NCBI RefSeq assembly: GCF_006345805.1
Contig: NC_043025.1
Span: forward strand, 2,604,001 to 2,668,000
Length of the DNA: 64,000 nt
Direction: 5' to 3'
DNA from: Octopus sinensis
Taxonomy: Eukaryota
This document shows positions 21,235 through 49,435 of the stretch, in pieces. A model generated the notes under the pieces. It had not been told where the DNA came from. It did not search any database and saw only the letters and a program-made list of their open reading frames with translations. The position numbers were made by a program, and so were the translations under genes. Each line of letters opens with the position of its first letter. Position 1 is the first letter of the stretch.

Positions 21235-21334
21235 NNNNNNNNNNNNNNNNNNNNNNNNNNNNNNNNNNNNNNNNNNNNNNNNNNNNNNNNNNNNNNNNNN
21301 NNNNNNNNNNNNNNNNNNNNNNNNNNNNNNNNNN
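21235..21334. other. Assembly gap (100 N)
   Basis: Run of N. True size and relative orientation of the two flanks are unknown. Confidence 0.99.
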
Positions 21335-24300
21335 TGCTGAAACATACGGGCACTCGCAATACACAGAACGCTGCTGCTACTGCCAAAGCAAGAGCCTCGA
21401 GACGCTGAAGACTGGGCACTCTTGCATACACAGAACGCTGCTGCTACTGCAAAGCAAGAGGCTCCGAGACTGCTGAACAATGGGCACTCCGCAATACACA
21501 GAACGCTGATGCTACTGCCAAGCAAGAGCCTCCGAGACTGCTGGAACAATGGACTCCGCAATACACAGAAGCGCTGCTGCTACTGCCCACAAAGCAAGAG
21601 GCTCTCCGAGACTGCTGAACAATGGGCACTCCGCAATACACAGAACGCTGCTGCTACTGCCAAGCAAGAGACTCCGAGACTGCTGAACAACGGGCACTCC
21701 GCAATACACAGAACGCTGCTGCTACTGCCAAAGCAAGAGCCTCCGAGACTGCTGAACAATGGGCACTCCGCAATACACAGAACGCTGCTGCTACTGCCAA
21801 AGCAAGAGCCTCCGAGACTGCTGAACAATGGGCACTCCGCAATACACAGAACGCTGCTGCTACTGCCAAAGCAAGAGCCTCCGAGACTGCTGAACAACGG
21901 GCACTCCGCAATACACAGATTTCGCTGCTACTGCCAAAGCAAGAGCTCCGAGACTGCTGAACAATGGGCACTCCGCAATACACAGAACGCTGCTGCTACT
22001 GCCAAAGCAAGAGCCTCCGAGACTGCTGAAACAATGGGCCACTCCGCAATACACAGAACGCTGCTGCTACTGCCAAAGCAAGAGCCTCCGAGACTGCTGA
22101 ACAATAGGCCACCCGCAATATACAGAACGCTGCTGCTACTGCCAAAGCAAGAGACTCCGAGACTGCTGAACAATGGGCACTCCGCAATACACAGAACGCT
22201 GCTGCTACTGCCAAAGCAAGAGCCTCCGAGACTGCTGAACAATGGGCACTCCGCAATACACAGAACGCTGCTGCTACTGCCAATGCGAGAGCCTCCGAGA
22301 CTGCTGAACAATGGGCACTCCGCAATACACAGAACGCTGCTGCTACTGCCAAAGCAAGAGCCTCCGAGACTGCTGAACAACGGGCACTCCGCAATACACA
22401 GAACGCTGCTGCTACTGCCAAATAAGAGCCTCCGAGACTGCTGAACAACGGGCACTCCGCAATACACAGAACGCTGCTGCTACTGCCAAAGCAAGAGCCT
22501 CCGAGACTGCTGAACAACGGGCACTCCGCAATACACACAACGCTGCTGCTACTGCCAAAGCAAGAGCCTCCGAGACTGCTGAACAAAGGGCACTCCGCAA
22601 TACACAGAACGCTGCTGCTACTGCCAAAGCAAGAGCCTCCGAGACTGCTGAACAACGGGCACTCCGCAATACACAGAACGCTGCTGCTACTGCCAAAGCA
22701 AGAGCCTCCGAGACTGCTGAACAACAGGCACTCCGCAATACACAGAACGCTGCTGCTACTGCGAAAGCAAGAGCCTCCGAGACTGCTGAACAACGGGCAC
22801 TCCGCAATACACAGAACGCTGCTGCTACTGCGAAAGCAAGAGCCTCCGAGACTGCTGAACAACGGGCACTCCGCAATACACAGAACGCTGCTGCTACTGC
22901 CAATGCGAGAGCCTCCGAGACTGCTGAACAACGGGCACTCCGCAATACACAGAACGCTGCTGCTACTGCCAATGCGAGAGCCTCCGAGACTGCTGAACAA
23001 CGGGCACTCCGCAATACACAGAACGCTGCTACTGCCAATGCAAGAGCCTCCGAGACTGCTGAACAACGGGCACTCCGCAATACACAAACGCTGCTGCTAT
23101 GCCAAAGCAAGAGCCTCCGAGACTGCTGAACAACGGGCACTCCGCAATACCAGAACGCTGCTGCTACTGCCAATGCGAGAGCCTCCGAGACTGCTGAACA
23201 ATGGGCACTCCGCAATACACAGAACGCTGCTGCTACTGCCAAAGCAAGAGCCTCCGAGACTGCTGAACAATGGGCACTCCGCAATACACAGAACGCTGCT
23301 GCTACTGCCAAAGCAAGAGCCTCCGAGACTGCTGAACAATGGGCACTCCGCAATACACAGAACGCTGCTGCTACTGCCAAAGCAAGAGCCTCCGAGACTG
23401 CTGAACAACGGGCACTCCGCAATACACAGAACGCTGCTGCTACTGCCAAAGCAAGAGCCTCCGAGACTGCTGAACAATGGGCACTCCGCAATACACAGAA
23501 CGCTGCTGCTACTGCCAAAGCAAGAGCCTCCGAGACTGCTGAACAACGGGCACTCCGCAATACACAGAACGCTGCTGCTACTGCCAAAGCAAGAGCCTCC
23601 GAGACTGCTGAACAACGGGCACTCCGCAATACACAGAACGCTGCTGCTACTGCCAATGCGAGCCTCCGAGACTGCTGAACAAGGGCACTCCGCAATACAC
23701 AGAACGCTGCTGCTACTGCCAAAGCAAGAGCCTCCGAGACTGCTGAACAATGGGCACTCCGCAATACACAGAACGCTGCTGCTACTGCCAAAGCAAGAGC
23801 CTCCGAGACTGCTGAACAATGGGCACTCCGCAATACACAGAACGCTGCTGCTACTGCCAAAGCAAGAGCCTCCGAGACTGCTGAACAATGGGCACTCCGC
23901 AATACACAGAACGCTGCTGCTACTGCCAAGCAAGAGCCTCCGAGACTGCTGAACAATGGGCACTCCGCAATACACAGAACGCTGCTGCTACTGCCAAAGC
24001 AAGAGCCTCCGAGACTGCTGAACAATGGGCACTCCGCAATACACAGAACGCTGCTGCTACTGCACCAAAGCAAGAGCCTCCGAGACTGCTGAACAATGGC
24101 ACTCCGCAATACACAGAACGCTGCTGCTACTGCCAAGCAAGAGCCTCCGAGACTGCTGAACAATGGGCACTCCGCAATACACAGAACGCTGCTGCTACTG
24201 CAAAGCAAGAGCCTCCGAGACTGCTGAACAATGGCACTCCGCAATACACAGAACGCTGCTGCTACTGCCAAGCAAGAGCCTCCGAGACTGCTGAACAATG

Positions 24301-27300
24301 GGCACTCCGCAATACACAGAACGCTGCTGCTATGCCAAAGCAAGAGCCTCCGAGACTGCTGAACAATGGGCACTCCGCAATACACAGAACGCTGCTGCTA
24401 CTGCCAAGCAAGAGCCTCCGAGACTGCTGAACAACGGGCACTCCGCAATACACAGAACGCTGCTGCTACTGCCAAAGCAAGAGCCTCCGAGACTGCTGAA
24501 CAACGGGCACTCCGCAATACACAGAACGCTGCTGCTACTGCCAAAGCAAGAGCCTCCGAGACTGCTGAACAACGGGCACTCCGCAATACACAGAACGCTG
24601 CTGCTACTGCCAATGCGAGAGCCTCCGAGACTGCTGAACAACGGGCACTCCGCAATACACAGAACGCTGCTGCTACTGCCAAAGCAAGAGCCTCCGAGAC
24701 TGCTGAACAACGGGCACTCCGCAATACACAGAACGCTGCTGCTACTGCCAAAGCAAGAGCCTCCGAGACTGCTGAACAACGGGCACTCCGCAATACACAG
24801 AACGCTGCTGCTACTGCCAAAGCAAGAGCCTCCGAGACTGCTGAACAATGGGCACTCCGCAAACACACAGAACGCTGCTGCTACTGCCAAAGCAAGAGCC
24901 TCCGAGACTGCTGAACAATGGGCACTCGCAATACACAGAACGCTGCTGCTACTGCCAAAGCAAGAGCCTCCGAGACTGCTGAACAACGGGCACTCCGCAA
25001 TACACAGAACGCTGCTGCTACTGCCAAAGCAAGAGCCTCCGAGACTGCTGAACAATGGGCACTCCGCAATACACAGAACGCTGATGCTACTGCCAAAGAG
25101 AGCCTCCGAGACTGCTGAACAACGGGCACTCCGCAATACACAGAACGCTGCTGCTACTGCCAAAGCAAGAGCCTCCGAGACTGCTGAACAATGGGCACTC
25201 CGCAATACACAGAACGCTGTGCTACTGCCAAAGCAAGAGCCTCCGAGACTGCTGAACAACGGGCACTCCGCAATACACAGAACGCTGCTGCTACTGCCAA
25301 AGCAAGAGCCTCCGAGACTGCTGAACAAGGGCACTCCGCAATACACAGAACGCTGCTGCTACTGCCAATGCGAGAGCCTCCGAGACTGCTGAACAATGGC
25401 ACTCCGCAATACACAGAACGCTGCTGCTACTGCCAAGCAAGAGCCTCCGAGAATGCTGAACAAGGCACTCCGCAATACACAGAACGCTGCTGCTACTGCC
25501 AAAGCAAGAGCCTCCGAGACTGCTGAACAATGGGCACTCCGCAATACACAGAACGCTGCTGCTACTGCCAATGCGAGAGCCTCCGAGACTGCTGAACAAT
25601 GGGCACTCCGCAATACACAGAACGCTGCTGCTACTGCCAAAGCAAGAGCCTCCGAGACTGCTGAACAATGGGCACTCCGCAATACACAGAACGCTGCTGC
25701 TACTGCCAAAGCAAGAGCCTCCGAGACTGCTGAACAACGGGCACTCCGCAATACACAGAACGCTGCTGCTACTGCCAATGCGAGAGCCTCCGAGACTGCT
25801 GAACAACGGGCACTCCGCAATACACAGAACGCTGCTGCTACTGCCAAAGCAAGAGCCTCCGAGACTGCTGAACAACGGGCACTCCGCAATACACAGAACG
25901 CTGCTGCTACTGCCAAAGCTAGAGCCTCCGAGACTGCTGAACAATGGTCACTCTGCAATACACAGAACGCTGCTGCTACTGCCAATGCTAGAGCCTCCGA
26001 GACTGTTGAACAATGGTCACTCTGCAATACACAGAACGCTGCTGCTACTGCCAATGCGACAGCCTCCGAGACTGCTGAACAATGGTCACTCCGCAATACA
26101 CAGAACGCTGCTGCTACTGCCAAAGCAAGAGCCTCCGAGACTGCTGAACAATGGGCACTCCGCAATACACAAAACGCTGCTGCTACTGCCAATGCGAGAG
26201 CCTCCGAGACTGCTGAACAACGGGCACTCCGCAATACACAGAACGCTGCTGCTACTGCCAAAGCAAGAGCCTCCGAGACTGCTGAACAACGGGCACTCCG
26301 CAATACACAGAACGCTGCTGCTACTGCCAAAGCAAGAGCCTCCGAGACTGCTGAACAACGGGCACTCCGCAATACACAGAACGCTGCTGCTACTGCCAAA
26401 GCAAGAGCCTCCGAGACTGCTGAACAATGGGCACTCCGCAATACACAGAACGCTGATGCTACTGCCAATGCGAGAGCCTCCGAGACTGCTGAACAACGGG
26501 CACTCCGCAATACACAGAACGCTGCTGCTACTGCCAATGCGAGAGCCTCCGAGACTGCTGAACAATGGGCACTCCGCAATACACAGAACGCTGATGCTAC
26601 TGCCAAAGCAGAGCGTCCGAGACTGTAACAACGGGAACTCCGCAATACACAGAACGCTGCTGCTACTACCCATAGCAAGAGCCTCCGAGACTGCTGAACA
26701 ACGGGCACCGCAATACACAGAACGCTGCTGCTACTGCCATAGCAAGAGCCTCCGAGACTGCTGAACAACGGGCACTCCGCAATACAGAACGCTGCTGCTA
26801 CTGCCAAAGCAAGAGCCTCCGAGACTGCTGAACAATGGGCACTCCGCAATACACAGAACGCTGCTGCTACTGCCAAAGCAAGAGCCTCCGAGACTGCTGA
26901 ACAATGGTCACTCCGCAATACACAGAACGCTGCTGCTACTGCCAAAGCAAGAGCCTCCGAGACTGCTGAACAATGGGCACTCCGCAATACACAGAACGCT
27001 GCTGCTACTGCCAAGCAAGAGCCTCCGAGACTGCTGAACAATGGGCACACGCAAGCAATACACAGAACGCTGCTGCTACTGCCAAAGCAAGAGCCTCCGA
27101 GACTGCTGAACAATGGGCACTCCGCAATACACAGAACGCTGCTGCTACTGCCAAAGCAAGAGCTCCGAGACTGCTGAACAATGGGCACTCCGCAATACAC
27201 AGAACGCTGCTGCTACTGCCAAAGCAAGAGCCTCCGAGACTGCTGAACAATGGGCACTCCGCAATACACAGAACTTGCTGCTACTGCCAAAGCAAGAGAG

Positions 27301-30300
27301 CTCCGAGACTGCTGAACAATGGTCACTCCGCAATACACAGAACGCTGCTGCTACTGCCAAAGCAAGAGCCTCCGAGACTGCTGAACAATGGGCACTCCGC
27401 AATACACAGAACGCTGCTGCTACTGCCAAAGCAAGAGCCTCCGAGACTGCTGAACAATGGTCACTCCGCAATACACAGAACGCTGCTGCTACTGCCAAAG
27501 CAAGAGCCTCCGAGACTGCTGAACAATGGGCACTCCGCAATACACAGAACGCTGCTGCTACTGCCAAAGCAAGAGCCTCCGAGACTGCTGAACAATGGTC
27601 ACTCCGCAATACACAGAACGCTGCTGCTACTGCCAATGCCAGAGCCTCCGAGACTGCTGAACAATGGGCACTCCGCAATACACAGAACGCTGCTTCTACT
27701 GCCAAAGCAAGAGCCTCCGAGACTGCTGAACAATGGGCACTCCGCAATACACAGAACGCTGATGCTACTGCCAAAGCAAGAGCCTCCGAGACTGCTGCTG
27801 AACAATGGGCACTCCGCAATACACAGAACGCTGCTGCTACTGCCAAGCAAGAGCTCCGAGACTGCTGAACAATGGTCACTCCGCAATACACAGAACGCTG
27901 CTGCTAATACAAAGCAGAGCGTCCGAGACTGCTGAACAACGGGCACTCCGCAATACACAGAACGCTGCTGCTACTGCCAAAGCAAGAGCCTCCGAGACTG
28001 CTGAACAACGGGAACTCCGCAATACACAGAACGCTGCTGCTACTGCCAAAGCAAGAGCCTCCGAGACTGCTGAACAACGGGAACTCCGCAATACACAGAA
28101 CGCTGCTGCTACTGCCAAAGCAAGAGCCTCCGAGACTGCTGAATAACGGGCACTCCGCAATACACAGAACGCTGCTGCTACTGCCAATGCGACAGCCTCC
28201 GAGACTGCTGGAACAACGGGAACTCCGCAATACACAGAACGCTGCTGCTACTCCAAAGCAAGAGCCTCCGAGACTGCTGAACAACGGGCACTCCGCAATA
28301 CACAGAACGCTGCTGCTACTGCCAAAGCAAGAGCTCCGAGACTGCTGAACAACGGGCACTCGGCAATACACAGAACGCTGCTGCTACTGCCAAAGCAAGA
28401 GGCCTCCGAGACTGCTGAACAATGGGCACTCCGCAATACACAGAACGCTGCTGCTACTGCCAAAGCAAGAGCCTCCGAGACTGCTGAACAATGGGCACTC
28501 TGCAATACACAGAACGCTGCTGCTACTGCCAAAGCAAGAGGCTCCGAGACTGCTGAACAATGGCACTCCGCAATACACAGAACGCTGCTGCTACTGCCAA
28601 GCAAGAGCCTCCGAGACTGCTGAACAATGGGCACTCTGCAATACACAGAACGCTGCTGCTACTGCCAAAGCAAGAGCCTCCGGACTGCTGAACAATGGGC
28701 ACTCCGCAATACACAGAACGCTGCTGCTACTGCCAAAGCAAGAGCCTCCGAGACTGCTGAACAATGGGCACTCCGCAATACACAGAACGCTTTGCTACTG
28801 CCAAAGCAAGAGCCTCCGAGACTGCTGAACAATGGGCACTCTGCAATACACAGAACGCTGCTGCTACTGCCAAAGCAAGAGCCTCCGAGACTGCTGAACA
28901 ACGGGCACTCCGCAATACACAGAACGCTGCTGCTACTGCCAAAGCAAGAGCCTCCGAGACTGCTGAACAATGGGCACTCCGCAATACACAGAACGCTGCT
29001 GCTACTGCCAAAGCAAGAGCCTCCGAGAGTGAACTGAAACGGGCACTCCGCAATACACAGAACGCTGCTGCTACTACCATAGCAAGAGCCTCCGAGACTG
29101 CTGAACAACGGGCACTCCGCAATACACAGAACGCTGCTGCTACTGCCAAAGCAAGAGCCTCCGAGACTGCTGAACAATGGGCACTCCGTATTACACAGAA
29201 CGCTGATGCTACTGCCAAAGCAAGAGCCTCCGAGACTGCTGAACAATGGGCACTCCGCAATACACAGAACGCTGCTGCTACTGCCAAAGCAAGAGCCTCC
29301 GAGACTGCTGAACAATGGGCACTCCGCAATACACAGAACGCTGCTGCTACTACCATAGCAAGAGCCTCCGAGACTGCTGAACAACGGGCACTCCGCAATA
29401 CACAGAACGCTGCTGCTACTGCCAAAGCAAGAGCCTCCGAGACTGCTGAACAATGGGCACTCCGTATTACACAGAACGCTGATGCTACTGCCAAAGCAAG
29501 GGCCTCCGAGACTGCTGAACAACGGGCAATCCGCAATACACAGAACGCTGCTGCTACTGCCAAAGCAAGAGCCTCCGAGACTGCTGAACAATGGGCACTC
29601 CGTATTACACAGAACGCTGATGCTACTGCCAAAGCAAGAGCCTCCGAGACTGCTGAACAACGGGCACTCCGCAATACACAGAACGCTGCTGCTACTGCCA
29701 AAGCAAGAGCCTCCGAGACTGCTGAACAATGGGCACTCCGCAATACACAGAACGCTGCTGCTACTGCCAATGCGACAGCCTCCGAGACTGCTGAACAATG
29801 GTCACTCCGCAATACACAGAACGCTGCTGCTACTGCCAAAGCAAGAGCCTACGAGAATGCTGAACAATGGGCACTCCGCAATACACAGAACGCTGCTGCT
29901 ACTGCCAAAGCAAGAGCCTCCGAGACTGCTGAACAATGGGCACTCCGCAATACACAGAACGCTGCTGCTACTGCCAATGCGACAGCCTCCGAGACTGTTG
30001 AACAATGGTCACTCCGCAATACACAGAACGCTGCTGCTACTGCCAAAGCAAGAGCCTACGAGAATGCTGAACAATGGGCACTCCGCAATACACAGAACGC
30101 TGCTGCTACTGCCAAAGCAAGAGCCTCCGAGACTGCTGAACAATGGGCACTCCGCAATACACAAAACGCTGCTGCTACTGCCAATGCGACAGCCTCCGAG
30201 AATGCTGAATAACGGGAACTCCGCAATACACAGAACGCTGCTGCTACTACCATAGCAAGAGCCTCCGAGACTGCTGAACAACGGGCACTCCGCAATACAC

Positions 30301-33300
30301 AGAACGCTGCTGCTACTGCCAAAGCAAGAGCCTCCGAGACTGCTGAACAATGGGCACTCCGCAATACACAGAACGCTGCTGCTACTGCCAATGCGACAGC
30401 CTCCGAGACTGTTGAACAATGGTCACTCCGCAATACACAGAACGCTGCTGCTACTGCCAAAGCAAGAGCCTCCGAGAATGCTGAACAATGGGCACTCCGC
30501 AATACACAGAACGCTGCTGCTACTGCCAAAGCAAGAGCCTCCGAGACTGCTGAACAATGGGCACTCCGCAATACACAAAACGCTGCTGCTACTGCCAATG
30601 CGACAGCCTCCGAGAATGCTGAATAACGGGAACTCCGCAATACACAGAACGCTGCTGCTACTACCATAGCAAGAGCCTCCGAGACTGCTGAACAACGGGC
30701 ACTCCGCAATACACAGAACGCTGCTGCTACTGCCAAAGCAAGAGCCTCCGAGACTGCTGAACAACGGGCACTCCGCAATACACAGAACGCTGCTGCTACT
30801 GCCAAAGCAAGAGCCTCCGAGACTGCTGAACAATGGGCCCTCCGTATTACACAAAACGCTGATGCTACTGCCAATGCTAGAGCCTCCGAGACTGCTGAAC
30901 AACGGGCACTCCGCAATACACAGAACGCTGCTGCCACTGCCAATGCGAGAGCCTCCGAGACTGCTGAACAATCGGCACTCCGTATTACACAGAACGCTGA
31001 TGCTAATACCAAAGCAGAGCGTCCGAGACTGTAACAACGGGAACTCCGCAATACACAGAACGCTGCTGCTACTACCATAGCAAGAGCCTCCGAGACTGCT
31101 GAACAACGGGCACTCCGCAATACACAGAACGCTGCTGCTACTACCATAGCAAGAGCCTCCGAGACTGCTGAACAACGGGCACTCCGCAATATCAGAACGC
31201 TGCTGCTACTGCCAAAGCAAGAGCCTCCGAGACTGCTGAACAATGGGCACTCCGCAATACACAGAACGCTGCTGCTACTGCCAAAGCAAGAGCCTCCGAG
31301 ACTGCTGAACAATGGTCACTCCGCAATACACAGAACGCTGCTGCTACTGCCAAAGCAAGAGCCTCCGAGACTGCTGAACAATGGGCACTCCGCAATACAC
31401 AGAACGCTGCTGCTACTCCCAAAGCAAGAGCATCCGAGACTGCTGAACAATGGGCACACCGCAATACACAGAACGCTGCTGCTACTGCCAAAGCAAGAGC
31501 CTCCGAGACTGCTGAACAATGGGCACTCCGCAATACACAGAACGCTGCTGCTACTGCCAAAGCAAGAGCCTCCGAGACTGCTGAACAATGGGCACTCCGC
31601 AATACACAGAACGCTGCTGCTACTGCCAAAGCAAGAGCCTCCGAGACTGCTGAACAATGGGCACTCCGTATTACACAGAACTTTGCTGCTACTGCCAAAG
31701 CAAGAGCCTCCGAGACTGCTGAACAATGGTCACTCCGCAATACACAGAACGCTGCTGCTACTGCCAAAGCAAGAGCCTCCGAGACTGCTGAACAATGGGC
31801 ACTCCGCAATACACAGAACGCTGCTGCTACTGCCAAAGCAAGAGCCTCCGAGACTGCTGAACAATGGTCACTCCGCAATACACAGAACGCTGCTGCTACT
31901 GCCAAAGCAAGAGCCTCCGAGACTGCTGAACAATGGGCAGTCCGCAATACACAGAACGCTGCTGCTACTGCCAAAGCAAGAGCCTCCGAGACTGCTGAAC
32001 AATTGTCACTCCGCAATACACAGAACGCTGCTGCTACTGCCAATGCCAGAGCCTCCGAGACTGCTGAACAATGGGCACTCCGCAATACACAGAACGCTGC
32101 TTCTACTGCCAAAGCAAGAGCCTCCGAGACTGCTGAACAATGGGCACTCCGCAATACACAGAACGCTGATGCTACTGCCAAAGCAAGAGCCTCAGAGACT
32201 GCTGAACAATGGGCACTCCGCAATACACAGAACGCTGCTGCTACTGCCAAAGCAAGAGCCTCCGAGACTGCTGAACAATGGTCACTCCGCAATACACAGA
32301 ACGCTGCTGCTAATACCAAAGCAGAGCGTCCGAGACTGCTGAACAACGGGAACTCCGCAATACACAGAACGCTGCTGCTACTTCCAAAGCAAGAGCCTCC
32401 GAGACTGCTGAACAACGGGAACTCCGCAATACACAGAACGCTGCTGCTACTGCCAAAGCAAGAGCCTCCGAGACTGCTGAACAACGGGAACTCCGCAATA
32501 CACAGAACGCTGCTGCCACTGCCAAAGCAAGAGCCTCCGAGACTGCTGAATAACGGGCACTCCGCAATACACAGAAAGCTGCTGCTACTGCCAATGCGAC
32601 AGCCTCCGAGACTGCTGAACAACGGGAACTCCGCAATACACAGAACGCTGCTGCTACTTCCAAAGCAAGAGCCTCCGAGACTGCTGAACAACGGGAACTC
32701 CGCAATACACAGAACGCTGCTGCTACTGCCAAAGCAAGAGGCTCCGAGACTGCTGAACAACGGGCACTCGGCAATACACAGAACGCTGCTGCTACTGCCA
32801 AAGCAAGAGGCTCCGTGACTGCTGAACAATGGGCACTCCGCAATACACAGAACGCTGCTGCTACTGCCAAAGCAAGAGGCTCCGTGACTGCTGAACAATG
32901 GGCACTCTGCAATACACAGAACGCTGCTGCTACTGCCAAAGCAAGAGGCTCCGTGACTGCTGAACAATGGGCACTCTGCAATACACAGAACGCTGCTGCT
33001 ACTGCCAAAGCAAGAGCCTCCGAGACTGCTGAACAATGGGCACTCTGCAATACACAGAACGCTGCTGCTACTGCCAAAGCAAGAGGCTCCGTGACTGCTG
33101 AACAATGGGCACTCTGCAATACACAGAACGCTGCTGCTACTGCCAAAGCAAGAGCCTCCGAGACTGCTGAACAATGGGCACTCTGCAATACACAGAACGC
33201 TTCTGCTACTGCCAAAGCAAGAGGCTCCGTGACTGCTGAACAATGGGCACTCTGCAATACACAGAACGCTGCTGCTACTGCCAAAGCAAGAGCCTCCGAG

Positions 33301-36300
33301 ACTGCTGAACAACGGGCACTCTGCAATACACAGAACGCTGCTGCTACTGCCAAAGCAAGAGCCTCCGAGACTGCTGAACAATGGGCACTCTGCAATACAC
33401 AGAACGCTGCTGCTACTGCCAAAGCAAGAGCCTACGAGAGTGCTGAACAGTGGGCACTCCGCAATACACAGAACGCTGCTGCTACTGCCAAAGCAAGAGG
33501 CTCCGAGACTGCTGAACAACGGGCACTCCGCAATACACAGATCTTCGCTGCTACTGCCAAAGCAAGAGCATCCGAGACTGCTGAACATTGGGCACTTTCC
33601 AATACACAGAACGCTGCTGCTACTGACAAAGCAAGCGCCTCCGAGACTGCTGAAAAATGGGCACCCCGCAATACACAGAACGCTGCTGCTACTGTCAAAG
33701 CAAGAGCCTCCGAGACTGCTGAACAATAGGCACCCCGCAATACACAGAACGCTGCTGCTACTGCGAAAGCAAGAGACTCTGAGACTGCTGAACAATGGGC
33801 ACCCCGCAATACACAGAACGCTGCTGCTACTGCGAAAGCAAGAGCCTCCGAGACTGCTGAACAATGGGCACTCCGTATTACACAGAACGCTGATGCTACT
33901 GCCAATGCGAGAGCCTCCGAGACTGCTGAACAATGGGCACTCCGCAATACACAGAACGCTGCTGCTACTACCAATGCGAGAGACTCCGAGACTGCTGAAT
34001 AACGGGCACTCCGCAATACACAGAACGCTGCTGCTACTGCCAAAGTAAGTGCCTCCGAGACTGCTGAACAACGGGCACTCCGCAATACACACAACGCTGC
34101 TGCTACTGCCAAAGCAAGAGCCTCCGAGACTGCTGAACAACGGGCACTCCGCAACACACACAACGCTGCTGCTACTGCCAAAGCAAGAGCCTCCGAGACT
34201 GCTGAACAACGGGCACTCCGCAATACACAGAACGCTGCTGCTACTGCCAAAGCAAGAGCGTCCGAGACTGCTGAACAACGGGCTCTACGCAATACACAGA
34301 TTGCTGCAGCTACTGCCAAAGCAAGAGCGTCCGAGACTGCTGAACAACGGGCTCTACGCAATACACAGAATGCTGCAGCTACTGCGAAAGCAAGAGCGTC
34401 CGAGTCTGCTGAACAACGAGCACTCCGCAATACGCAGGACGCTGCTGCTACTGCGAAAGCAAGAGCCTCCAAGACTGCTGAACAACGGGCACTCCGCAAT
34501 ACACACAACGCTGCTGCTACTGCCAATGCGAGAGTCTCCGAGACTGCTGAACAACGGGCACTCCGCAATAACAGAACGCTGCTGCTACTACCAATGCGAG
34601 AGCCTCCGAGACTGCTGAACAACGGGAACTCCGCAATACACAAAACGCTGCTGCTACTACCAATGCGAGAGCCTCCGAGACTGCTGAACAACGGGCACTC
34701 CGCAATACACAAAACGCTGCTGCTACTCCCAATGCGAGAGCCTCCGAGACTGCTGAACAACGGGCACTCCGCAATACACAAAACGCTGCTGCTACTACCA
34801 ATGCGAGAGCCTCCGAGACTGCTGAACAATGGGCACTCCGTATTACACAGAACGCTGATGCTACTGCCAAAGCAAGAGCCTCCGAGACTGCTGAACAATG
34901 GGCACTCCGCAATACACAGAACGCTGCTGCTACTGCCAAAGCAAGAGCCTCCGAGACTGCTGAACAATGGGCACTCCGTATTACACAGAACGCTGATGCT
35001 ACTGCCAAAGCAAGAGCCTCCGAGACTGCTGAACAACGGGCACTCCGCAATACACAGAACGCTGCTGCTACTGCCAAAGCAAGAGCCTTCGAGACTGCTG
35101 AACAATGGGCACTCCGTATTACACAGAACGCTGATGCTACTGCCAAAGCAAGAGCCTCCGAGACTGCTGAACAACGGGAACTCCGCAATACACAGAACGC
35201 TGCTGCTACTGCCAAAGCAAGAGCCTCCGAGACTGCTGAACAAAGGGCACTCCGCAATACACAGAACGCTGCTGCTACTGCCAATGCGACAGCCTCCGAG
35301 ACTGTTGAACAATGGTCACTCCGCAATACACAGAACGCTGCTGCTACTGCCAAAGCAAGAGCCTCCGAGAATGCTGAACAACGGGCACTCCGCAATACAC
35401 AGAACGCTGCTGCTACTGCCAAAGCAAGAGCCTCCGAGACTGCTGAACAATGGGCACTCCGCAATACACAGAACGCTGCTGCTACTGCCAATGCGACAGC
35501 CTCCGAGACTGTTGAACAATGGTCACTCCGCAATACACAGAACGCTGCTGCTACTGCCAAAGCAAGAGCCTACGAGAATGCTGAACAATGGGCACTCCGC
35601 AATACACAGAACGCTGCTGCTACTGCCAAAGCAAGAGCCTCCGAGACTGCTGAACAATGGGCACTCCGCAATACACAAACGCTGCTGCTACTGCCAATGC
35701 GACAGCCTCCGAGAATGCTGAATAACGGGAACTCAGCAATACACAGAACGCCGCTGCTACTACCATAGCAAGAGCCTCCGAGACTGCTGAACAACGGGCA
35801 CTCCGCAATACACAGAACGCTGCTGCTACTGCCAAAGCAAGAGCCTCCGAGACTGCTGAACAATGGGCACTCCGCAATACACAGAACGCTGCTGCTACTG
35901 CCAATGCGACAGCCTCCGAGACTGTTGAACAATGGTCACTCCGCAATACACAGAACGCTGCTGCTACTGCCAAAGCAAGAGCCTCCGAGAATGCTGAACA
36001 ATGGGCACTCCGCAATACACAGAACGCTGCTGCTACTGCCAAAGCAAGAGCCTCCGAGACTGCTGAACAATGGGCACTCCGCAATACACAAAACGCTGCT
36101 GCTACTGCCAATGCGACAGCCTCCGAGAATGCTGAATAACGGGAACTCCGCAATACACAGAACGCTGCTGCTACTACCATAGCAAGAGCCTCCGAGACTG
36201 CTGAACAACGGGCACTCCGCAATACACAGAACGCTGCTGCTACTGCCAAAGCAAGAGCCTCCGAGACTGCTGAACAACGGGCACTCCGCAATACACAGAA

Positions 36301-39300
36301 CGCTGCTGCTACTGCCAAAGCAAGAGCCTCCGAGACTGCTGAACAATGGGCACTCCGTATTACACAAAACGCTGATGCTACTGCCAATGCTAGAGCCTCC
36401 GAGACTGCTGAACAACGGGCACTCCGCAATACACAGAACGCTGCTGCTACTGCCAATGCGAGAGCCTCCGAGACTGCTGAACAATCGGCACTCCGTATTA
36501 CACAGAACGCTGATGCTAATACCAAAGCAGAGCGTCCGAGACTGTAACAACGGGAACTCCGCAATACACAGAACGCTGCTGCTACTACCATAGCAAGAGC
36601 CTCCGAGACTGCTGAACAACGGGCACTCCGCAATACACAGAACGCTGCTGCTACTACCATAGCAAGAGCCTCCGAGACTGCTGAACAACGGGCACTCCGC
36701 AATACCAGAACGCTGCTGCTACTGCCAAAGCAAGAGCCTCCGAGACTCCTGAACAATGGGCACTCCGCAATACACAGAACGCTGCTGCTACTGCCAAAGC
36801 AAGAGCCTCCGAGACTGCTGAACAATGGTCACTCCGCAATACACAGAACGCTGCTGCTACTGCCAAAGCAAGAGCCTCCGAGACTGCTGAACAATGGGCA
36901 CTCCGCAATACACAGAACGCTGCTGCTACTGCCAAAGCAAGAGCCTCCGAGACTGCTGAACAATGGGCAGTCCGCAATACACAGAACGCTGCTGCTACTG
37001 CCAAAGCAAGAGCCTCCGAGACTGCTGAACAATGGTCACTCCGCAATACACAGAACGCTGCTGCTACTGCCAATGCCAGAGCCTCCGAGACTGCTGAACA
37101 ATGGGCACTCCGCAATACACAGAACGCTGCTGCTACTGCCAAAGCAAGAGCCTCCGAGACTGCTGAACAATGGGCACTCCGCAATACACAGAACGCTGCT
37201 GCTACTGCCAAGCAAGAGCCTCCGAGACTGCTGAACAATGGGCAAGAGCCTAACAAGCTGCTTCAAAGCAGCTCCGAGACTGCTGAACAATGGGCACTCC
37301 GCATACACAGAACGCTGCTGCTACTGCCAAAGCAAGAGCCTCCGAGACTGCTGAACAATGGGCACTCCGCAATACACAGAACGTGCTGCTACTGCCAAAG
37401 CAAGAGCCTCCGAGACTGCTGAACAATGGGCACTCCGCAATACACAGAACGCTGCTGCTACTGCCAAAGCAAGAGCCTCCGAGACTGCTGAACAATGGGC
37501 ACTCCGCAATACACAGAACGCTGCTGCTACTGCCAAAGCAAGACCTCCGAGACTGCTGAACAATGGGCACTCCGCAATACACAGAACGCTGCTGCTACTG
37601 CCAAAGCAAGAGCCTCCGAGACTGCTGAACAATGGGCACTCCGCAATACACAGAACGCTGCTGCTACTGCCAAAGCAAGAGCCTCCGAGACTGCTGAACA
37701 ATGGCACTCCGCAATACACAGAACGCTGATGCTACTGCCAAAGCAAGAGCCTCCGAGACTGCTGAACAATGGGCACTCCGCAATACACAGAACGCTGCTG
37801 CTACTGCCAAAGCAAGAGCCTCCGAGACTGCTGAACAATGGTCACTCCGCAATACACAGAACGCTGCTGCTACTGCCAAAGCAGAGCGTCCGAGACTGCT
37901 AACAACGGGCACTCCGCAATACACAGAACGCTGCTGCTACTGCCAAAGCAAGAGCCTCCGAGACTGCTGAACACGGGAACTCCGCAATACACAGAACGCT
38001 GCTGCTACTGCCAAAGCAAGAGCCTCCGAGACTGCTGAACAACGGGAACTCCGCAATACACAGAACGCTGCTGCATGCCAAAGCAAGAGCCTCCGAGACT
38101 GCTGAATAACGGGACTCCGCAATACACAGAAAGCTGCTGCTACTGCCAATGCGAAGAGCCTCCGAGACTGCTGAACAATGGGCACTCCGCAATACACAGA
38201 ACGCTGCTGCTACTGCCCAAAGCAAGAGCATCCGAGACTGCTGAACAACGGGCACTCCGCAATACACAGAACAACGCTGCTGCTACTGCCAAAGCAAGAG
38301 CCTCCGAGACTGCTGAACAACGGGCACTCCGCAATACACAGAACGCTGCTGCTACTGCCAATGCAAGAGCCTCCGAGACTGCTGAACAAGGGCACTCCGC
38401 AATACACAGAAACGCTGCTACTGCCAAAGCGAGAGCTCCTCGAGACTGCTGAACAACGGGCACTCCGCAATACACAGAACGCTGCTGCTACTGCCAATGC
38501 GAGAGCCTCCGAGACTGCTGAACAACGGGCACTCCGCAATACACAGAACGCTGCTGCTACTGCCAAAGCAAGAGCCTCCGAGACTGCTGAACAATGGGCA
38601 CTCCGCAATACACAGAACGCTGCTGCTACTGCCAATGCGAGAGCCTCCGAGACTGCTGAACAACGGGCACTCCGCAATACACAGAACGCTGCTGCTACTG
38701 CCAAAGCAAGAGCCTCCGAGACTGCTGAACAATGGGCACTCCGCAATACACAGAACGCTGCTGCTACTGCCAATGCGAGAGCCTCCGAGACTGCTGAACA
38801 ACGGGCACTCCGCAATACACACAGAACGCTGCTGCTACTGCCAAAGCAAGAGCCTCCGAGACTGCTGAACAACGGGCACTCCGCAATACACAGAACGCTG
38901 CTGCTACTGCCAATGCGAGAGCCTCCGAGACTGCTGACCAACCGCAACGGAACTGCTTACGCAACAAGCCTCCCGCTGCTGAACAAGGGTTCCGCAATAC
39001 ACAGAACGCTGCTGCTACTGCCAAAGCAAGAGCCTCCGAGACTGCTGAAAACAACGGGCACTCCGTACACAGAACGCTGATGCTACTGCCAAAGCAAGAG
39101 CCTCCGAGACTGCTGAACAATGGCACTCCGCAATACACAGAACGCTGCTGCTACTGCCAAAGCAAGAGCCTCCGAGACTGCTGAACAACGGGCACTCCGC
39201 AATACACAGAACGCTGCTGCTACTGCCAATGCGAGAGCCTCCGAGACTGCTGAACAACGGGCACTCCGCAATACACAGAACGCTGCTGCTACTGCCAAAG

Positions 39301-42300
39301 CAAGAGCCTCCGAGACTGCTGAACAACGGGCACTCCGCAATACACAGAACGCTGCTGCTACTGCCAATGCGAGAGCCTCCGAGACTGCTGAACAACGGGC
39401 ACTCCGCAATACACAGAACGCTGATGCTACTGCCAATCAAGAGCCTCCGAGACTGCTGAACAACGGGCACTCCGCAATACACAGAACGCTGATGCTACTG
39501 CCAATGCGAGAGCCTCCGAGACTGCTGAACAACGGGCACTCCGCAATACACAGAACGCTGCTGCTACTGCCAAAGCAAGAGCCTCCGAGACTGCTGAACA
39601 ACGGGCACTCCGCAATACACAGAACGCTGATGCTACTGCCAAAGCAAGAGCCTCCGAGACTGCTGAACAACGGGCACTCCGCAATACACAGAACGCTGAT
39701 GCTACTGCCAATGCGAGAGCCTCCGAGACTGCTGAACAACGGGCACTCCGCAATACACAGAACGCTGATGCTACTGCCAAAGCAAGAGCCTCCGAGACTG
39801 CTGAACAACGGGCACTCCGCAATACACAGAACGCTGATGCTACTGCCAAAGCAAGAGCCTCCGAGACTGCTGAACAAAGGGCACTCCGCAATACACAGAA
39901 CGCTGCTGCTACTGCCAAAGCAAGAGCCTCCGAGACTGCTGAATAACGGGCACTCTGCAATACACAGAACGCTGCTGCTACTACCATAGCAAGAGCCTCC
40001 GAGACTGCTGAATAACGGGCACTCTGCAATACACAGAACGCTGCTGCTACTGCCAATGCCAGAGCCTCCGAGACTGCTGAACAATGGGCACTCCGCAGTA
40101 CACAGAACGCTGCTTCTACTGCCAAAGCAAGAGCCTCCGAGACTGCTGAACAACGGGCACTCCGCAATACACAGAACGCTGCTGCTACTGCCAAAGCAAG
40201 AGCCTCCGAGACTGCTGAACAACGGGCACTCCGCAATACACAGAACGCTGCTGCTACTGCCAATGCGAGAGCCTCCGAGACTGCTGAACAACGGGCTCTA
40301 CGCAATACACAGAATGCTGCAGCTACTGCGAAAGCAAGAGCGTCCGAGTCTGCTGAACAACGGGAACTCCGCAATACGCAGGACGCTGCTGCTACTGCGA
40401 AAGCAAGAGCCTCCGAGACTGCTGAACAACGGGCACTCCGCAATACGCAGGACGCTGCTGCTACTGCCAAAGCAAGAGCCTCCGAGACTGCTGAACAACG
40501 GGCACTCCGCACTACGCAGGACGCTGCTGCTACTGCGAAAGCAAGAGCCTCCGAGACTGCTGAACAACGGGCACTCCGCAATACACAGAACGCTGATGCT
40601 ACTGCCAATGCGAGAGCCTCCGAGACTGCTGAACAACGGGCACTCCGCAATACCAGAACGCTGCTGCTACTGCCAATGCGAGAGCCTCCGAGACTGCTGA
40701 ACAACGGGCACTCCGCAATACCAGAACGCTGCTGCTACTACCAATGCGAGAGCCTCCGAGACTGCTGAACAACGGGCACTCCGCAATACACAGAACGCTG
40801 CTGCTACTGCCAAAGCAAGAGCCTCCGAGACTGCTGAACAACGGGCACTCCGCAATACACAGAACGCTGCTGCTACTGCCAATGCGAGAGCCTCCGAGAC
40901 TGCTGAACAACGGGCACTCCGCAATACACAGAACGCTGATGCTACTGCCAAATCAAGAGCCTCCGAGACTGCTGAACAACGGGCACTCCGCAATACACAG
41001 AACGCTGATGCTACTGCCAATGCGAGAGCCTCCGAGACTGCTGAACAACGGGCACTCCGCAATACACAGAACGCTGCTGCTACTGCCAAAGCAAGAGCCT
41101 CCGAGACTGCTGAACAACGGGCACTCCGCAATACACAGAACGCTGATGCTACTGCCAATGCAAGAGCCTCCGAGACTGCTGAACAACGGGCACTCCGCAA
41201 TACACAGAAACGCTGAGCTACTGCCAATGCGAGAGCCTCCGAGACTGCTGAACAACGGGCACTCCGCAATACACAGAAACGCTGATGCTACTGCCAAAGC
41301 AAGAGCCTCCGAGACTGCTGAACAACGGGCACTCCGCAATACACAGAACGCTGATGCTACTGCCAAAGCAAGAGCCTCCGAGACTGCTGAACAAAGGGCA
41401 CTCCGCAATACACAGAACGCTGCTGCTACTGCCAAAGCAAGAGCCTCCGAGACTGCTGCAACGATACGGGCACTCTGCCACAATAATACATAAGAAAGCA
41501 AGGCTGGCCCGCTATCTGCTAAAAAATGAAGCAGAAGAGCCTCCGAGATGCTGAAAAACGGGCACTCGCAATACACAGAACGCTGCTGCTACTGCCAATG
41601 CCAGAGCCTCCGAGACTGCTGAACAATGGGCACTCCGCAATACACAGAACGCCTGCTTCTACTGCCAATGCGAGGAGACCTTACCTCCCGAGACTGCTGA
41701 ACAACGCTGCTCTATACGCAATACACAGATGAATGCACAGCCACACGCACCTGTACTGCCAAAGCAAGAGCTCCGAGGCTGCTGAACAACGGGCACTCCG
41801 CAATACGCAGGACGCTGCTGCTACTGCGAAAGCAAGAGCCTCGAGACTGCTGAACAACGGGCACTCCGCAATACACAGGAACGCTGCTGCTACTGCCAAA
41901 GCAAGAGCCTCCGAGACTGCTGAAACACGGGCACTCCGCACTACGCAGGACGCTGCTGCTGCTACTGCGAAAGCAAGAGCCTCCGAGACTGCTGAACAAC
42001 GGGCACTCGCCCAATACACAGAACGCTGATGCTACTGCCAATGCGACGAGCCTCCGAGACTGCTGACAAACGGGAACTCCGCAATACACACCGAAACGCT
42101 GCTGCTACTGCCAATGCGACAGCCTCCGAGACTGCTGAACAACGGGCACTCTGCAATACCAGAACGCTGCTGCTACTACCAATGCGAGAGCCTCCGAGAC
42201 TGCTGAACAACGGGAACTCCGCAATACACAGATCTTCGCTGCTACTGCCAAAGCAAGAGCATCCGAGACTGCTGAACATTGGGCACTTCCCAATACACAG

Positions 42301-43547
42301 AACGCTGCTGCTACTGCCAAAGCAAGCGCCTCCGAGACTGCTGAACAACGGGCACTCCGCAATACACAGAACGCTGCTGCTACTCCCAATGCGAGAGCCT
42401 CCGAGACTGCTGAAAAATGGGCACCCCGCAATACACAGAACGCTGCGCTGCCTAATGCAAGCACGAGGGCCTCACGAGACGCATGCCCCCTGCCGAAACA
42501 ATAGGCACTCCGCAATACACAGAACGCTGCTGCTACTGCGAAAGCAAGAGACTCTGAGACTGCTGAACAATGGGCACTCCGCAATACACAGAACGCTGCT
42601 GCTACTGCGAAAGCAAGAGACTCTGAGACTGCTGAACAATAGGCACCCCGCAATACACAGAACGCTGCTGCTACTGCGAAAGCAAGAGACTCTGAGACTG
42701 CTGAACAATGGGCACTCCGCAATACACACAACGCTGCTGCTACTGCCAAAGCAAGAGCCTCCGAGACTGCTGAACAATGGGCACTCCGCAATACACAGAA
42801 CGCTGCTGCTACTGCGAAAGCAAGAGCCTCCGAGACTGCTGAACAATGGGCACTCCGCAACACACACAACGCTGCTGCTACTGCCAATGCGAGAGCCTCC
42901 GAGACTGCTGAACAACGGGCACTCCGCAATACCAGAACGCTGCTGCTACTGCCAAAGCAAGAGCCTCCGAGACTGCTGAACAACGGGCACTCCGCAATAC
43001 ACAGAATGCTGCTGCTACTGCCAATGCGAAAGCCTCCGCGACTGCTGAACAACGGGCACTCCGCAATACACAGAACGCTGCTGCTACTGCCAAAGCAAGA
43101 GCCTCCGAGACTGCTGAACAACGGGCACTCCGCAATACACAGAACGCTGCTGCTACTGCCAAGCAAGACTCTCCGAGACTGCTGAACAACGGGCACTCCG
43201 CCAATACACAGAAGCGGCTGCTGCTACTGCCAAAGCAAGAGCCTCGAGACTGCTGAACAACGGCACTCCGCAATACACAGAACGCTGCTGCTGCTATGCC
43301 AAAGCAAGAGATCCGAGACTGCTGACAATGGGCATTCCGCAATACACAGAACGCTGCTGCTACTGCCAAAGCAAGAGACTCCGAGACTTCTGAACAACGG
43401 GCATTCCGCAATACACAGAACCCTGCTGGTACTGCCAAAGCAAGAGACTCCGAGACTGCTGAACAACGGGCACTCCGCAATACACAGAACGCTGCTGCTA
43501 CTGCCTATGCGAGAGTCTCCGAGACTGTGGAACAACGGGCATTCCGC
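21335..43547 (+). repeat. 69-bp tandem array (~320 units) encoding a 23-aa STPR-like repeat; Helitron-associated satellite
   Basis: Unit GAGACTGCTGAACAAYGGGCACTCCGCAATACACAGAACGCTGCTGCTACTGCCAAAGCAAGAGCCTCC; frame ETAEQ(R/W)ALRNTQNAAATAKARAS; abuts a Helitron helicase. Confidence 0.97.
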
Positions 43548-45661: not shown

Positions 45662-45690
45662 CCCGGGCAACGCCGGGCTATACTGCTTGT
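45662..45690 (+). terminator. Probable Helitron 3' terminus: GC hairpin plus degenerate CTAG|T
   Basis: CCCGG gcaacg CCGGG hairpin, then 8 nt later CTTG-T (one change from CTAG-T), about 1.1 kb after the helicase stop. Confidence 0.65.

Positions 45691-49388: not shown

Positions 49389-49431
<43 letters not shown>

Positions 49432-49435
<4 letters not shown>

What the first reader, a model, noticed from the sequence alone, without database searches (positions are those of the whole stretch)
21335..43547. A 22-kb satellite built from a protein-coding STPR-like repeat of a Helitron
Seen: the unit is exactly 69 bp (23 codons), about 320 copies, and one frame reads ETAEQRALRNTQNAAATAKARAS. The array runs directly into a Helitron helicase with a Helitron-type 3' end, and more RepHel sequence lies across the gap. 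Knowledge: STPR (score-and-three-residue peptide repeat) is a 23-aa DNA-binding repeat starting E(T/S)xE(E/Q)RxxR. The silkworm FMBP-1 repeat, recalled as ETSEERAARLAKMSAYAAQRLAN, gives 9/23 identities with no gaps, and FMBP-1 has only four copies. From memory, similar repeats occur at the N-terminus of some animal RepHel proteins. Inference: a coding repeat of a rolling-circle transposase was amplified ~80-fold into a satellite. This would be a route from transposon exon to satellite DNA, and a possible template for very long basic/alanine-rich helical peptides.
Basis: partly seen in the sequence, partly recalled or inferred. Interest (0 to 1): 0.82.

Follow-up and report, generated by a model that had tools for sequence, protein, structure and literature searches.

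The report
Satellite DNA born from Helitron STPR repeats
A 22-kb block of 69-base tandem repeats arose by runaway copying of two neighbouring DNA-binding (STPR) repeat units from the start of a Helitron transposase gene; it no longer codes for protein, and intermediate stages survive elsewhere in the same genome.

Summary
Window 21335-43547 holds about 322 head-to-tail 69-bp units. The left edge is a 100-N assembly gap, so 22 kb is a minimum.

The frame ETAEQ(R/W)ALRNTQNAAATAKARAS matches Pfam STPRs (PF21107) well above its cut-off.

- A full-length, decayed Helitron of the same family as the flanking helicase (C13383) carries two adjacent native STPR units in frame with RepHel. They are 82% identical in DNA to the monomer.
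- A second locus 400 kb away on the same contig keeps the Helitron 5' leader and ATG, which run in frame into a 12.7-kb array. It also shares the same array-to-helicase deletion junction.
- An 11-unit intermediate lies on C9.
- A free-standing 169-kb array with more derived monomers lies on C18.

Three caveats apply:
- The array is now non-coding. Most indels are 1 nt, there are in-frame stops, no codon-position bias and no ATG, and the longest open run is 17 units.
- The RepHel fragment across the gap belongs to an unrelated, inverted Helitron.
- The array abuts the helicase only because an internal deletion removed Rep.

STPRs in Helitrons and satellites derived from transposons are both published. 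This is a new variant of a known kind, with an unusually complete series of intermediate stages.

The parts
20410..21212 (-). Fragment of a different, diverged Helitron RepHel (the region between Rep and helicase). It reads away from the gap and is not part of the satellite-bearing element.
   Evidence: tblastn of intact RepHel proteins of this genome matches residues 838-1109 of H58 at 29% identity, E 2e-22, on the minus strand.
21235..21334 (.). Scaffold gap of 100 N. The left end of the array, and any Helitron 5' leader, is not assembled.
   Evidence: N run found. The sequence next to it is rich in indels.
21335..43547 (+). Satellite array of 69-bp units, about 322 copies. The plus-strand frame is an STPR repeat, now decayed.
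   Evidence: TRF; wrap-around alignment; Pfam PF21107 at 131 bits; no coding constraint; internal multi-unit duplications.
43521..43557 (+). Last, partial unit and the deletion junction. The unit keeps the native codons ACT GTG GAA (ETV). The next 10 bases, GTTTCAACAA, correspond to the native AATTCAAAAAA (NSKN) stretch and then join the helicase.
   Evidence: Alignment with the second junction copy L063 and with the native units of L062. Homology to other Helitron copies begins at 43558.
43558..44592 (+). Remnant of the C-terminal half of the Helitron PIF1-type helicase, from just before motif II (LIVGDE) to the C-terminus. It is a pseudogene with stops and small deletions.
   Evidence: Pfam PIF1 at 89.5 bits and Pif1_2B at 52.6 bits; tblastn 61% identity to H60 residues 1158-1517; 46 gap positions relative to the C6 copy.
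44593..45690 (+). Non-coding 3' tail of the Helitron, with a short GC hairpin (45662-45677) about 12 nt before the end.
   Evidence: About 40 family copies stop matching at window 45690-45700. The hairpin fold is weak, z = -1.1.
45691..46310 (+). Flank shared only with the second C29 locus. The two loci are therefore related by a local duplication, or by a transposition that read through the 3' end.
   Evidence: 271 of 277 bases are identical beyond the 3' end. The match to C29:3051022-3051728 covers query positions 1-620 and then stops.

Best explanation
The array is a non-coding satellite. It arose in place, inside a Helitron, by tandem amplification of a 69-bp stretch of the transposase gene that encodes STPR repeats.

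Source (shown). The source family has about five 23-aa STPR units at the N-terminus of RepHel. Units 3 and 4 carry an 18/19-nt direct repeat (AATTCAAAAAA[C/T]GCTGCTG) exactly 69 bp apart.

First step (inferred). Slippage or unequal exchange between these two repeats duplicated the interval. That created a chimeric unit made of the first third of unit 4 and the last two thirds of unit 3. This chimera is the satellite monomer.

Growth (partly shown). Further unequal exchange, including duplications of many units at once, expanded the array to hundreds of copies.

Loss of Rep (shown). One internal deletion, from inside a unit to helicase residue about 1158, removed Rep. The element was then duplicated on contig C29, giving the window's locus and a second locus 400 kb away. 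The two arrays have turned over independently since.

Spread (shown as a result; the route is unknown). A free-standing 169-kb array with more derived monomers now lies on C18.

Present state (shown). The frame is no longer maintained, so the sequence now evolves as satellite DNA and not as a gene.
For: - STPR identity: Pfam PF21107 at 131 and 49.6 bits against a cut-off of 27.
- STPR in frame with RepHel in intact ORFs of this genome.
- Source family: L062 (C13383) is colinear with RepHel residues 1-1282 and 88-89% identical to the window's helicase and tail. Its STPR units at L062:2901-2991 are 82% identical to the monomer. The direct repeat 69 bp apart can be read.
- Array inside the element: C29-b has the Helitron leader with its ATG (L064:594) running in frame into the array at about L064:831. 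The first unit keeps the native first third of unit 3. C29-b also has the same junction to the helicase.
- Edge units keep native codons, while interior units carry the derived AATACACAGAA.
- Graded series of identity to the native chimera: C9 61/69, C29 59/69, C18 53/69.
- Intermediate: 11 diverged units on C9, preceded by 157 nt of the Helitron leader at 86% identity.
- Independent instability: another Helitron family carries 5 to 21 copies of its own 69-bp STPR-like coding unit across 8 loci.
- No coding constraint: of 207 indel events, 161 are 1 nt and only 11 are 3 nt. Divergence by codon position is 0.039/0.028/0.034. Eleven of 227 indel-free units have stops. There is no in-frame ATG, and the longest open run is 17 units. 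The consensus of the C18-left subfamily has an in-frame TGA.
- Growth by blocks: 25861-28612 matches 30267-33021 at 97.5%, against a background of about 95.6%.
- Census: 2280 units match the core pattern, all on the plus strand. The three arrays account for about 2264 of them.
Against: - The left end of the window's array lies in a gap, so the 5' leader is shown only for the sister locus.
- The C18 array has no Helitron sequence at either edge. How it was seeded is unknown, and the order C29 then C18 rests only on monomer similarity.
- Single-base indels cluster in patches. This looks like unpolished long-read sequence, so the number of frameshifts is inflated.
- Divergence between the two C29 loci is uneven: 87-90% at the junction, about 93% over the helicase and 97.8% at the 3' end and flank. 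This is unexplained.
- The slippage step is an inference from sequence geometry and was not observed.
Confidence: 0.85

Rival explanations
1. Reverse direction. The 69-bp repeat is an older host satellite, or a fragment of a host STPR gene, that this Helitron family captured, so the Helitron is the recipient and not the source.
For: Helitrons are known to capture host sequence, and the HELIANO paper treats STPRs as a captured domain. The largest array, on C18, has no Helitron flanks.
Against: - STPR repeats sit at the N-terminus of several distinct Helitron families here, diverged at protein level and in frame in intact ORFs.
- The native units 3 and 4 differ from each other outside the short direct repeat, and the monomer is a chimera of the two.
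- Array edges keep native codons.
- C18 monomers are the most derived, and one subfamily has a stop codon.
Confidence: 0.05
2. The array is still a gene, or is translated, and produces very long STPR polypeptides.
For: The STPR frame is recognisable in 275 of 323 units. Runs of 17 stop-free units (391 aa) exist. Some frameshifts may be assembly errors.
Against: - No unit has an ATG in the frame.
- Eleven of 227 indel-free units carry stops made by substitutions.
- There is no excess of third-position change.
- Even the indel-poor stretch of 100 units switches frame.
- The sister locus has a stop between the ATG and the array.
- No predicted protein in a 5.8-billion-sequence collection matches the array closely.
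Confidence: 0.03
3. Assembly artefact. The array is inflated or collapsed, or it was wrongly joined to the helicase, or the two C29 loci are one locus assembled twice.
For: - The contig begins inside the array at a gap.
- Indels come in patches.
- An unplaced contig (C13183) duplicates window 48904-53500 at 98-99% identity, so uncollapsed haplotigs exist in this assembly.
- The flank is 97.8% identical between the two C29 loci.
Against: - The junction occurs twice, with 30 differences in 300 nt, 29 of them substitutions.
- The arrays differ in their dominant variants and are not colinear at any offset.
- Homology to the right stops after about 620 nt.
- The exact copy number remains uncertain, but the structure does not depend on it.
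Confidence: 0.05

Closest known systems
STPR domain (Pfam PF21107; silkworm FMBP-1 type)
   Same: The period is 23 aa, the unit starts E-T/S-x-E-Q/E-R, and the match lies above Pfam's gathering score.
   Different: Here there are hundreds of near-identical, decayed copies in non-coding DNA. Known proteins have a few diverged copies. DNA binding was not tested.
Helitron (HLE1) transposons with an STPR domain, as catalogued by HELIANO (PMC11417382)
   Same: STPRs lie upstream of RepHel in canonical Helitrons. The same arrangement is seen in this genome.
   Different: That paper says 17 accessory domains, STPRs apparently among them, lie in ORFs other than RepHel. Here the STPRs are in the same ORF as RepHel (L058). 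In the two sections read the paper does not mention amplification into a satellite.
Satellites carried by or derived from non-autonomous Helitrons or Helentrons (Drosophila DINE-TR1 central tandem repeats; oyster Helentron-borne repeats; PMC9659126, PMC7492417)
   Same: An internal tandem repeat of a rolling-circle transposon expands into long arrays (the oyster paper PMC7492417 from its abstract only).
   Different: In those cases the repeats are non-coding and many short arrays are dispersed by transposition. Here the seed is a coding repeat of the transposase, and only three large arrays and one relic exist, with no dispersal.
Satellites derived from ORFs of other transposons (CR1 ORF2 and HinfI repeat; L1 ORF2 and PROsat; gag and E3900; CACTA Tnp2 and CficCl-61-40; review PMC9659126)
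   Same: Coding sequence of a mobile element becomes the satellite monomer.
   Different: As the review lists them, those are ORF fragments; whether any was already periodic was not checked. Here the source was already a 69-bp periodic coding repeat, which explains why amplification started at that spot.

Membership tests
STPR repeat (PF21107) | Match to the curated HMM above the gathering score | tested here: met
   131 bits on window:28761-30209 and 49.6 bits on five consensus units, against a cut-off of 27.
STPR repeat (PF21107) | Tandem units of 23 residues | tested here: met
   69-bp period; majority unit ETAEQRALRNTQNAAATAKARAS.
STPR repeat (PF21107) | Expressed, sequence-specific DNA-binding protein domain | tested here: not met
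   Expression and DNA binding cannot be tested with these tools. What the sequence shows is that the array cannot encode an intact protein: frameshifts, stops, no ATG and no codon bias. It is a relic of STPR-coding DNA.
Helitron (HLE1) element | HUH Rep domain (Helitron_like_N) | tested here: not met
   It is absent from the window's element, because the array joins the helicase at residue about 1158. It is present in the family's full-length copy L062 (C13383:11488-12030).
Helitron (HLE1) element | PIF1-type helicase | tested here: met
   PF05970 at 89.5 bits and PF21530 at 52.6 bits, C-terminal half only, decayed.
Helitron (HLE1) element | 3' hairpin close to a CTRR end, and a 5' TC end | tested here: inconclusive
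   Family copies end at 45690-45700. The hairpin has a 5-bp stem and z = -1.1. The end reads CTTG rather than CTRR. The 5' end (about L062:2460 and L064:376) is defined by three copies only and cannot be placed to the base.
Satellite DNA | Long head-to-tail arrays of one monomer at more than one locus | tested here: met
   At least 22.2 kb in the window, 12.7 kb at C29-b and 169.1 kb on C18. There are 2280 pattern matches, all in one orientation.
Satellite DNA | Non-coding, with array-specific homogenised variants | tested here: met
   Each array has its own majority monomer. The QW variant makes up 49% of the window's units and is almost absent from C29-b.
Satellite DNA | Location in heterochromatin or at a centromere | not testable with these tools
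   This needs FISH or ChIP.
Transposon-dispersed satellite-like arrays (DINE-TR1 or Helentron type) | Many short arrays spread by transposition of a non-autonomous carrier | tested here: not met
   The leader occurs at only 5 places. The array-to-helicase junction was seen only at the two C29 loci, which also share about 0.6 kb of flank; no dedicated search for the junction elsewhere was run.

The most novel reading that the evidence does not exclude
The free-standing 169-kb array on C18, and perhaps the C29 arrays, may have gained a chromosomal role. One possibility is a centromeric or heterochromatin-nucleating satellite. Another is a binding sink for the STPR domains of active Helitron transposases, if that domain recognises the DNA that encodes it. 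In either case a transposase DNA-binding module would have produced both a protein domain and its own tandem target.
Probability: 0.06. Interest if true: 0.75.

Novelty: new variant of a known kind. Interest (0 to 1): 0.45.

Why it matters
This genome documents the birth of a satellite stage by stage:
- the native two-unit coding repeat;
- copy-number instability of 5 to 21 units inside otherwise intact elements;
- an 11-unit relic;
- arrays of 184 and 322 units still embedded in a gutted Helitron;
- a 169-kb free-standing array.

It also points to a simple rule. Coding tandem repeats whose DNA period is preserved, here 69 bp, are ready-made seeds for satellite formation. This could help predict where new satellites arise.

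It does not change what is known about Helitrons or STPR function. The satellite makes up only about 0.008% of this assembly.

Tried and rejected
- Comparing the window's array with the C29-b array unit by unit at every offset found no colinearity (best 0.932 against a mean of 0.918). The arrays are therefore not simple copies of each other.
- CpG decay was rejected as the cause of the R/W polymorphism. Only one of the four CpGs shows excess C>T, so it is a single variant that spread through the array.
- A regular higher-order repeat was not found. Identity falls smoothly with lag, and only irregular block duplications appear.
- No Helitron leader or helicase lies at the edges of the C18 array.
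- No DNA-level match of the monomer was found to the STPR regions of the other Helitron families (L036-L061). Only L062 and the C29-b and C9 loci match.
- Pfam does not call STPRs on the 69-bp repeat of the L056/L057 family. tblastn gives 44-49% identity to the satellite peptide with composition correction switched off. I treat that repeat as STPR-like only.
- One right-flank search was swamped by interspersed repeats and was repeated with a cleaner segment.
The C1 full-length copy, the right flank of C29-b and the rest of its array could not be read.
- A protein search with a 391-aa array translation found no close gene model, only weak hits that include cephalopod proteins.
- Genome identity: the size (2.72 Gb) and 30 large scaffolds fit the published Octopus sinensis PacBio/Hi-C assembly. 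This is an inference and was not verified.
Full report
**1. What is in the window**

Tandem Repeats Finder reports one array of 69-bp units from 21335 to 43547. Copies match at 94% in the left 16 kb and at 83% in the last 4.6 kb. G+C rises to 54-56% inside the array, against 30-42% outside.

A wrap-around alignment to the consensus resolves 323 units, 227 of them without indels. The majority unit translates on the plus strand to ETAEQRALRNTQNAAATAKARAS. Position 16 is C in 154 units and T in 152, so half the units read QR and half read QW.

The consensus has no stop in four of the six frames. An open frame is therefore not evidence of coding here.

The left border is a 100-N scaffold gap (21235-21334), so the array is at least 22.2 kb long. 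The contig that carries it starts inside the repeat.

The genome has 2.72 Gb in 13,516 contigs, 30 of them very large. This fits the published PacBio/Hi-C assembly of Octopus sinensis. I did not verify that identification.

**2. The flanks**

Right flank. From 43558 the plus strand encodes the C-terminal half of a Helitron helicase.
- Pfam gives PIF1 at 89.5 bits (profile positions 86-189) and Pif1_2B at 52.6 bits.
- tblastn gives 61% identity to residues 1158-1517 of an intact RepHel of this genome.
- The remnant has stops and small deletions.
- About 40 other copies of the family stop matching between 45690 and 45700, which places the 3' end there.
- A 5-bp GC hairpin lies about 12 nt upstream, but its fold is no better than shuffled sequence by much (z = -1.1).

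Left flank. Bases 21212 to 20410 on the minus strand match the central part of RepHel (residues 838-1109) at only about 29% identity. This piece reads away from the gap. If the array were its N-terminus, the STPR frame would have to lie on the minus strand, and it does not. It is a fragment of another Helitron and plays no part in the story.

The rest of the left side holds a Penelope-like element and non-LTR retrotransposons.

**3. Is the unit an STPR repeat?**

Pfam STPRs (PF21107, gathering score 27) gives 131 bits (E 2e-38, eight stretches) on a real 483-aa translation of the array. It gives 49.6 bits on five consensus units.

**4. Is it derived from a Helitron?**

Five lines of evidence say so.

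(a) This genome has at least 1,310 candidate Helitron Rep domains. Intact RepHel ORFs carry 23-aa STPR repeats at the N-terminus of the same ORF. In L058, STPRs (52 bits), Helitron_like_N (177 bits) and PIF1 (212 bits) lie in one 1,645-aa frame starting at its Met.

(b) The family that supplied the window's helicase has a colinear full-length, decayed member on C13383 (L062). It matches RepHel residues 1 to 1282 in order and is 88-89% identical in DNA to the window's helicase and tail. Its N-terminus reads MPPKK...ETSLARSARNSKNAAATAKVRTS-ETVEQRAVQNSKNAAVTTTTRSA-ETPLQRRG..., in the same frame as the conserved region that follows. L062:2901-2991 is 82% identical to the satellite monomer (E 1e-22).

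(c) A second locus lies 400 kb downstream on the same contig (C29-b). There the Helitron 5' leader with its ATG (90% identical to L062) runs in frame through the native first third of unit 3 into the array. The array fills C29:3036131-3048816, which is 12.7 kb. It ends in the same junction to the helicase.

(d) On C9, 157 nt of the same leader (86% identity) precede 11 diverged units.

(e) The edge units keep native codons. The first unit at C29-b and the last partial unit at both junctions retain the native AATTCAAAAAA (NSKN). The window's last unit also keeps ACT GTG GAA (ETV). Interior units have AATACACAGAA (NTQN) and GCT (A) at these places.

**5. How the monomer was made (inference from geometry)**

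In L062, units 3 and 4 share an 18/19-nt direct repeat, AATTCAAAAAA(C/T)GCTGCTG, exactly 69 bp apart. Slippage or unequal exchange between the two copies duplicates the interval between them. The result is a chimeric unit made of the first 24 nt of unit 4 and the last 45 nt of unit 3.

That chimera reads ETVEQRAVRNSKNAAATAKVRTS. Its identity to the array consensus sequences is graded:

| Array | Identity to the native chimera |
|---|---|
| C9 consensus | 61/69 |
| Both C29 consensus sequences | 59/69 |
| The two C18 consensus sequences | 53/69 |

The order native, C9, C29, C18 is what amplification out of the Helitron predicts.

A different, young Helitron family (L056/L057) shows the same instability at an early stage. 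Its own 69-bp STPR-like coding unit is present in 5 to 21 copies per element at eight loci. One copy carries 12 units inside an intact 1,763-aa ORF.

**6. Why the array touches the helicase**

Other family members continue upstream of 43558 with the normal N-terminal half of the helicase. The C6 copy, for example, reads ...DLVRTEVPTCNIGKNSEEAE. In the window, and in C29-b, the sequence upstream of ACTTGCAAC (TCNI) is the partial STPR unit instead.

One internal deletion of about 3.2 kb therefore removed the rest of the N-terminal region, Rep and the first half of the helicase. Both loci share this breakpoint (270/300 identity across it). The deletion thus predates their separation, and the junction is not an assembly chimera.

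At the junction the window's helicase frame is offset by one base from the STPR frame. In C29-b the two frames are aligned but a TAA lies between them. No fusion protein is encoded.

**7. Relation of the two C29 loci**

They also share the DNA beyond the Helitron 3' end. Of the first 277 bases, 271 are identical. The match runs for about 620 nt and then stops. The two loci are therefore related either by a local duplication or by a transposition that read through the 3' end. The window's left side is in the gap, so I cannot tell which.

Long colinear haplotigs are unlikely for four reasons:
- the flank homology ends after about 620 nt;
- the junction region differs by 10%, almost all substitutions;
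- the arrays are not colinear at any offset;
- the arrays have different dominant variants. The window has AAA GCA with 49% QW units. C29-b has AAT GCG with almost no QW units.

Each array has therefore turned over independently.

Inside the window's array, blocks of tens of units recur. For example, 25861-28612 matches 30267-33021 at 97.5%, against a background of about 95.6%. This indicates growth by unequal exchange of multi-unit segments.

**8. The family in the whole genome**

A 35-nt degenerate core pattern finds 2,280 units, all on the plus strand, and none for the reversed control pattern. Extrapolating from the sampled pieces gives about 1,940 on C18, 218 in the window and about 106 at C29-b. 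That totals 2,264, so no other large array exists in this assembly.

The C18 array spans 17,345,172-17,514,314, which is 169.1 kb. Every sampled 10-kb piece is fully repeat. It has abrupt edges without Helitron sequence.

It has at least two monomer subfamilies. The consensus of the left one carries an in-frame TGA (EIAEQRAFRNTQNAAASNNA*AS).

**9. Is it still coding?**

No.
- Of 207 indel events, 161 are single bases and only 11 are 3 nt long.
- Divergence from the majority by codon position is 0.039, 0.028 and 0.034, so there is no third-position excess.
- Eleven of the 227 indel-free units have a stop created by substitution.
- No unit has an ATG in the STPR frame.
- The longest stop-free run in that frame is 17 units, or 391 aa, at 25447-26619.

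The single-base indels cluster in patches (units 0-120, 220-260 and 280-320). Other stretches of 100 units have almost none. This pattern suggests incompletely polished long-read sequence, so the frameshift count is an overestimate. The substitution stops and the flat codon-position profile do not depend on the indels.

A search of 5.8 billion predicted proteins found nothing close to the array translation. The suggestion that the array could be a template for very long helical peptides is therefore not supported.

**10. Comparison with what is known**

STPRs are listed among the accessory domains stably associated with canonical Helitrons (HLE1) in the HELIANO survey (PMC11417382). That paper says all but a few accessory domains lie in ORFs other than RepHel. 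Here STPRs and RepHel share one ORF.

Satellites derived from transposons are well documented. They include Helitron or DINE central tandem repeats, Helentron-borne arrays in oysters, and cases where part of a transposon ORF became a monomer (CR1, L1, gag, CACTA transposase; PMC9659126 read; PMC7492417 seen only as an abstract).

Two things differ here. The seed is a coding repeat of the rolling-circle transposase that was already periodic. And the intermediate stages are all preserved in one genome. I rate this a new variant of a known kind.

**11. What remains open**

- The left end of the window's array.
- How the C18 array was seeded.
- The uneven divergence between the two C29 loci: 87-90% at the junction, about 93% over the helicase and 97.8% at the 3' end.
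- The exact Helitron termini.
- Whether any of the arrays is transcribed or has a chromosomal role.

Noticed in passing
L056:3373-4677 and L057:5943-6763 (C12599, C12605), plus C1794, C2533, C9004, C9082, C11249 and C12411: A second, young Helitron family carries its own 69-bp coding repeat (ETQEQREHRQEQDRMATAISREQ) in 5 to 21 near-identical copies per element. One copy sits inside an intact 1,763-aa RepHel ORF. Pfam does not call it STPRs.
   Followed up: partly
L058:2402-7336 (minus strand; C4:158755001-158765000): STPRs, Helitron_like_N and PIF1 lie in one uninterrupted ORF. The HELIANO paper states that most accessory domains, apparently including STPRs, lie in ORFs other than RepHel.
   Followed up: partly
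L035 and L066 (C18:17345172 to about 17360000): The left part of the 169-kb C18 array is a distinct monomer subfamily whose consensus has a TGA in the STPR frame. The right part (L031-L033, L067) is another subfamily, with 52/69 identity between the two.
   Followed up: partly
L067:3515-4200 (C18:17514315 onward): The C18 satellite ends abruptly and is followed directly by another tandem repeat of roughly 190 bp (GAGTCGAAAGAGTTATGCGGCCGGTTGATTGCCGGGG...).
   Followed up: no
window 48904-53500: An unplaced 6-kb contig (C13183) matches this stretch at 98-99% identity. It is probably an uncollapsed haplotig, so the assembly contains duplicated haplotypes.
   Followed up: no
window 21335-29500, 36470-39170 and 40550-43380: Single-base indels in the array come in patches, while the stretches between them have almost none. 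This looks like uneven polishing of long-read sequence rather than biology.
   Followed up: partly
window 1929-4270 (minus strand): Probable Penelope-like retroelement remnant: an ORF with a GIY-YIG endonuclease domain (Pfam 30 bits) sits next to ORFs (2668-4270) whose reverse-transcriptase look was judged by eye from the translations; Pfam found no family in 3251-4270.
   Followed up: partly
window 7557-8733 (plus strand) and 12682-15830 (minus strand): Two copies of the same non-LTR retrotransposon (AP endonuclease and RT) lie in inverted orientation about 4 kb apart. Their C-terminal ORF segments are nearly identical.
   Followed up: no
L062:2250-2400 (C13383:9750-9900): A 145-160-bp element just upstream of the Helitron 5' end occurs at 94-99% identity at very many loci. 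It looks like a SINE and is probably recently active.
   Followed up: no
window 43558-45967 compared with C29:3048818-3051300: Divergence between the two sister loci is uneven: 87-90% next to the array, about 93% over the helicase and 97.8% at the 3' end and flank. Gene conversion or local sequence error could explain it, but neither was tested.
   Followed up: no
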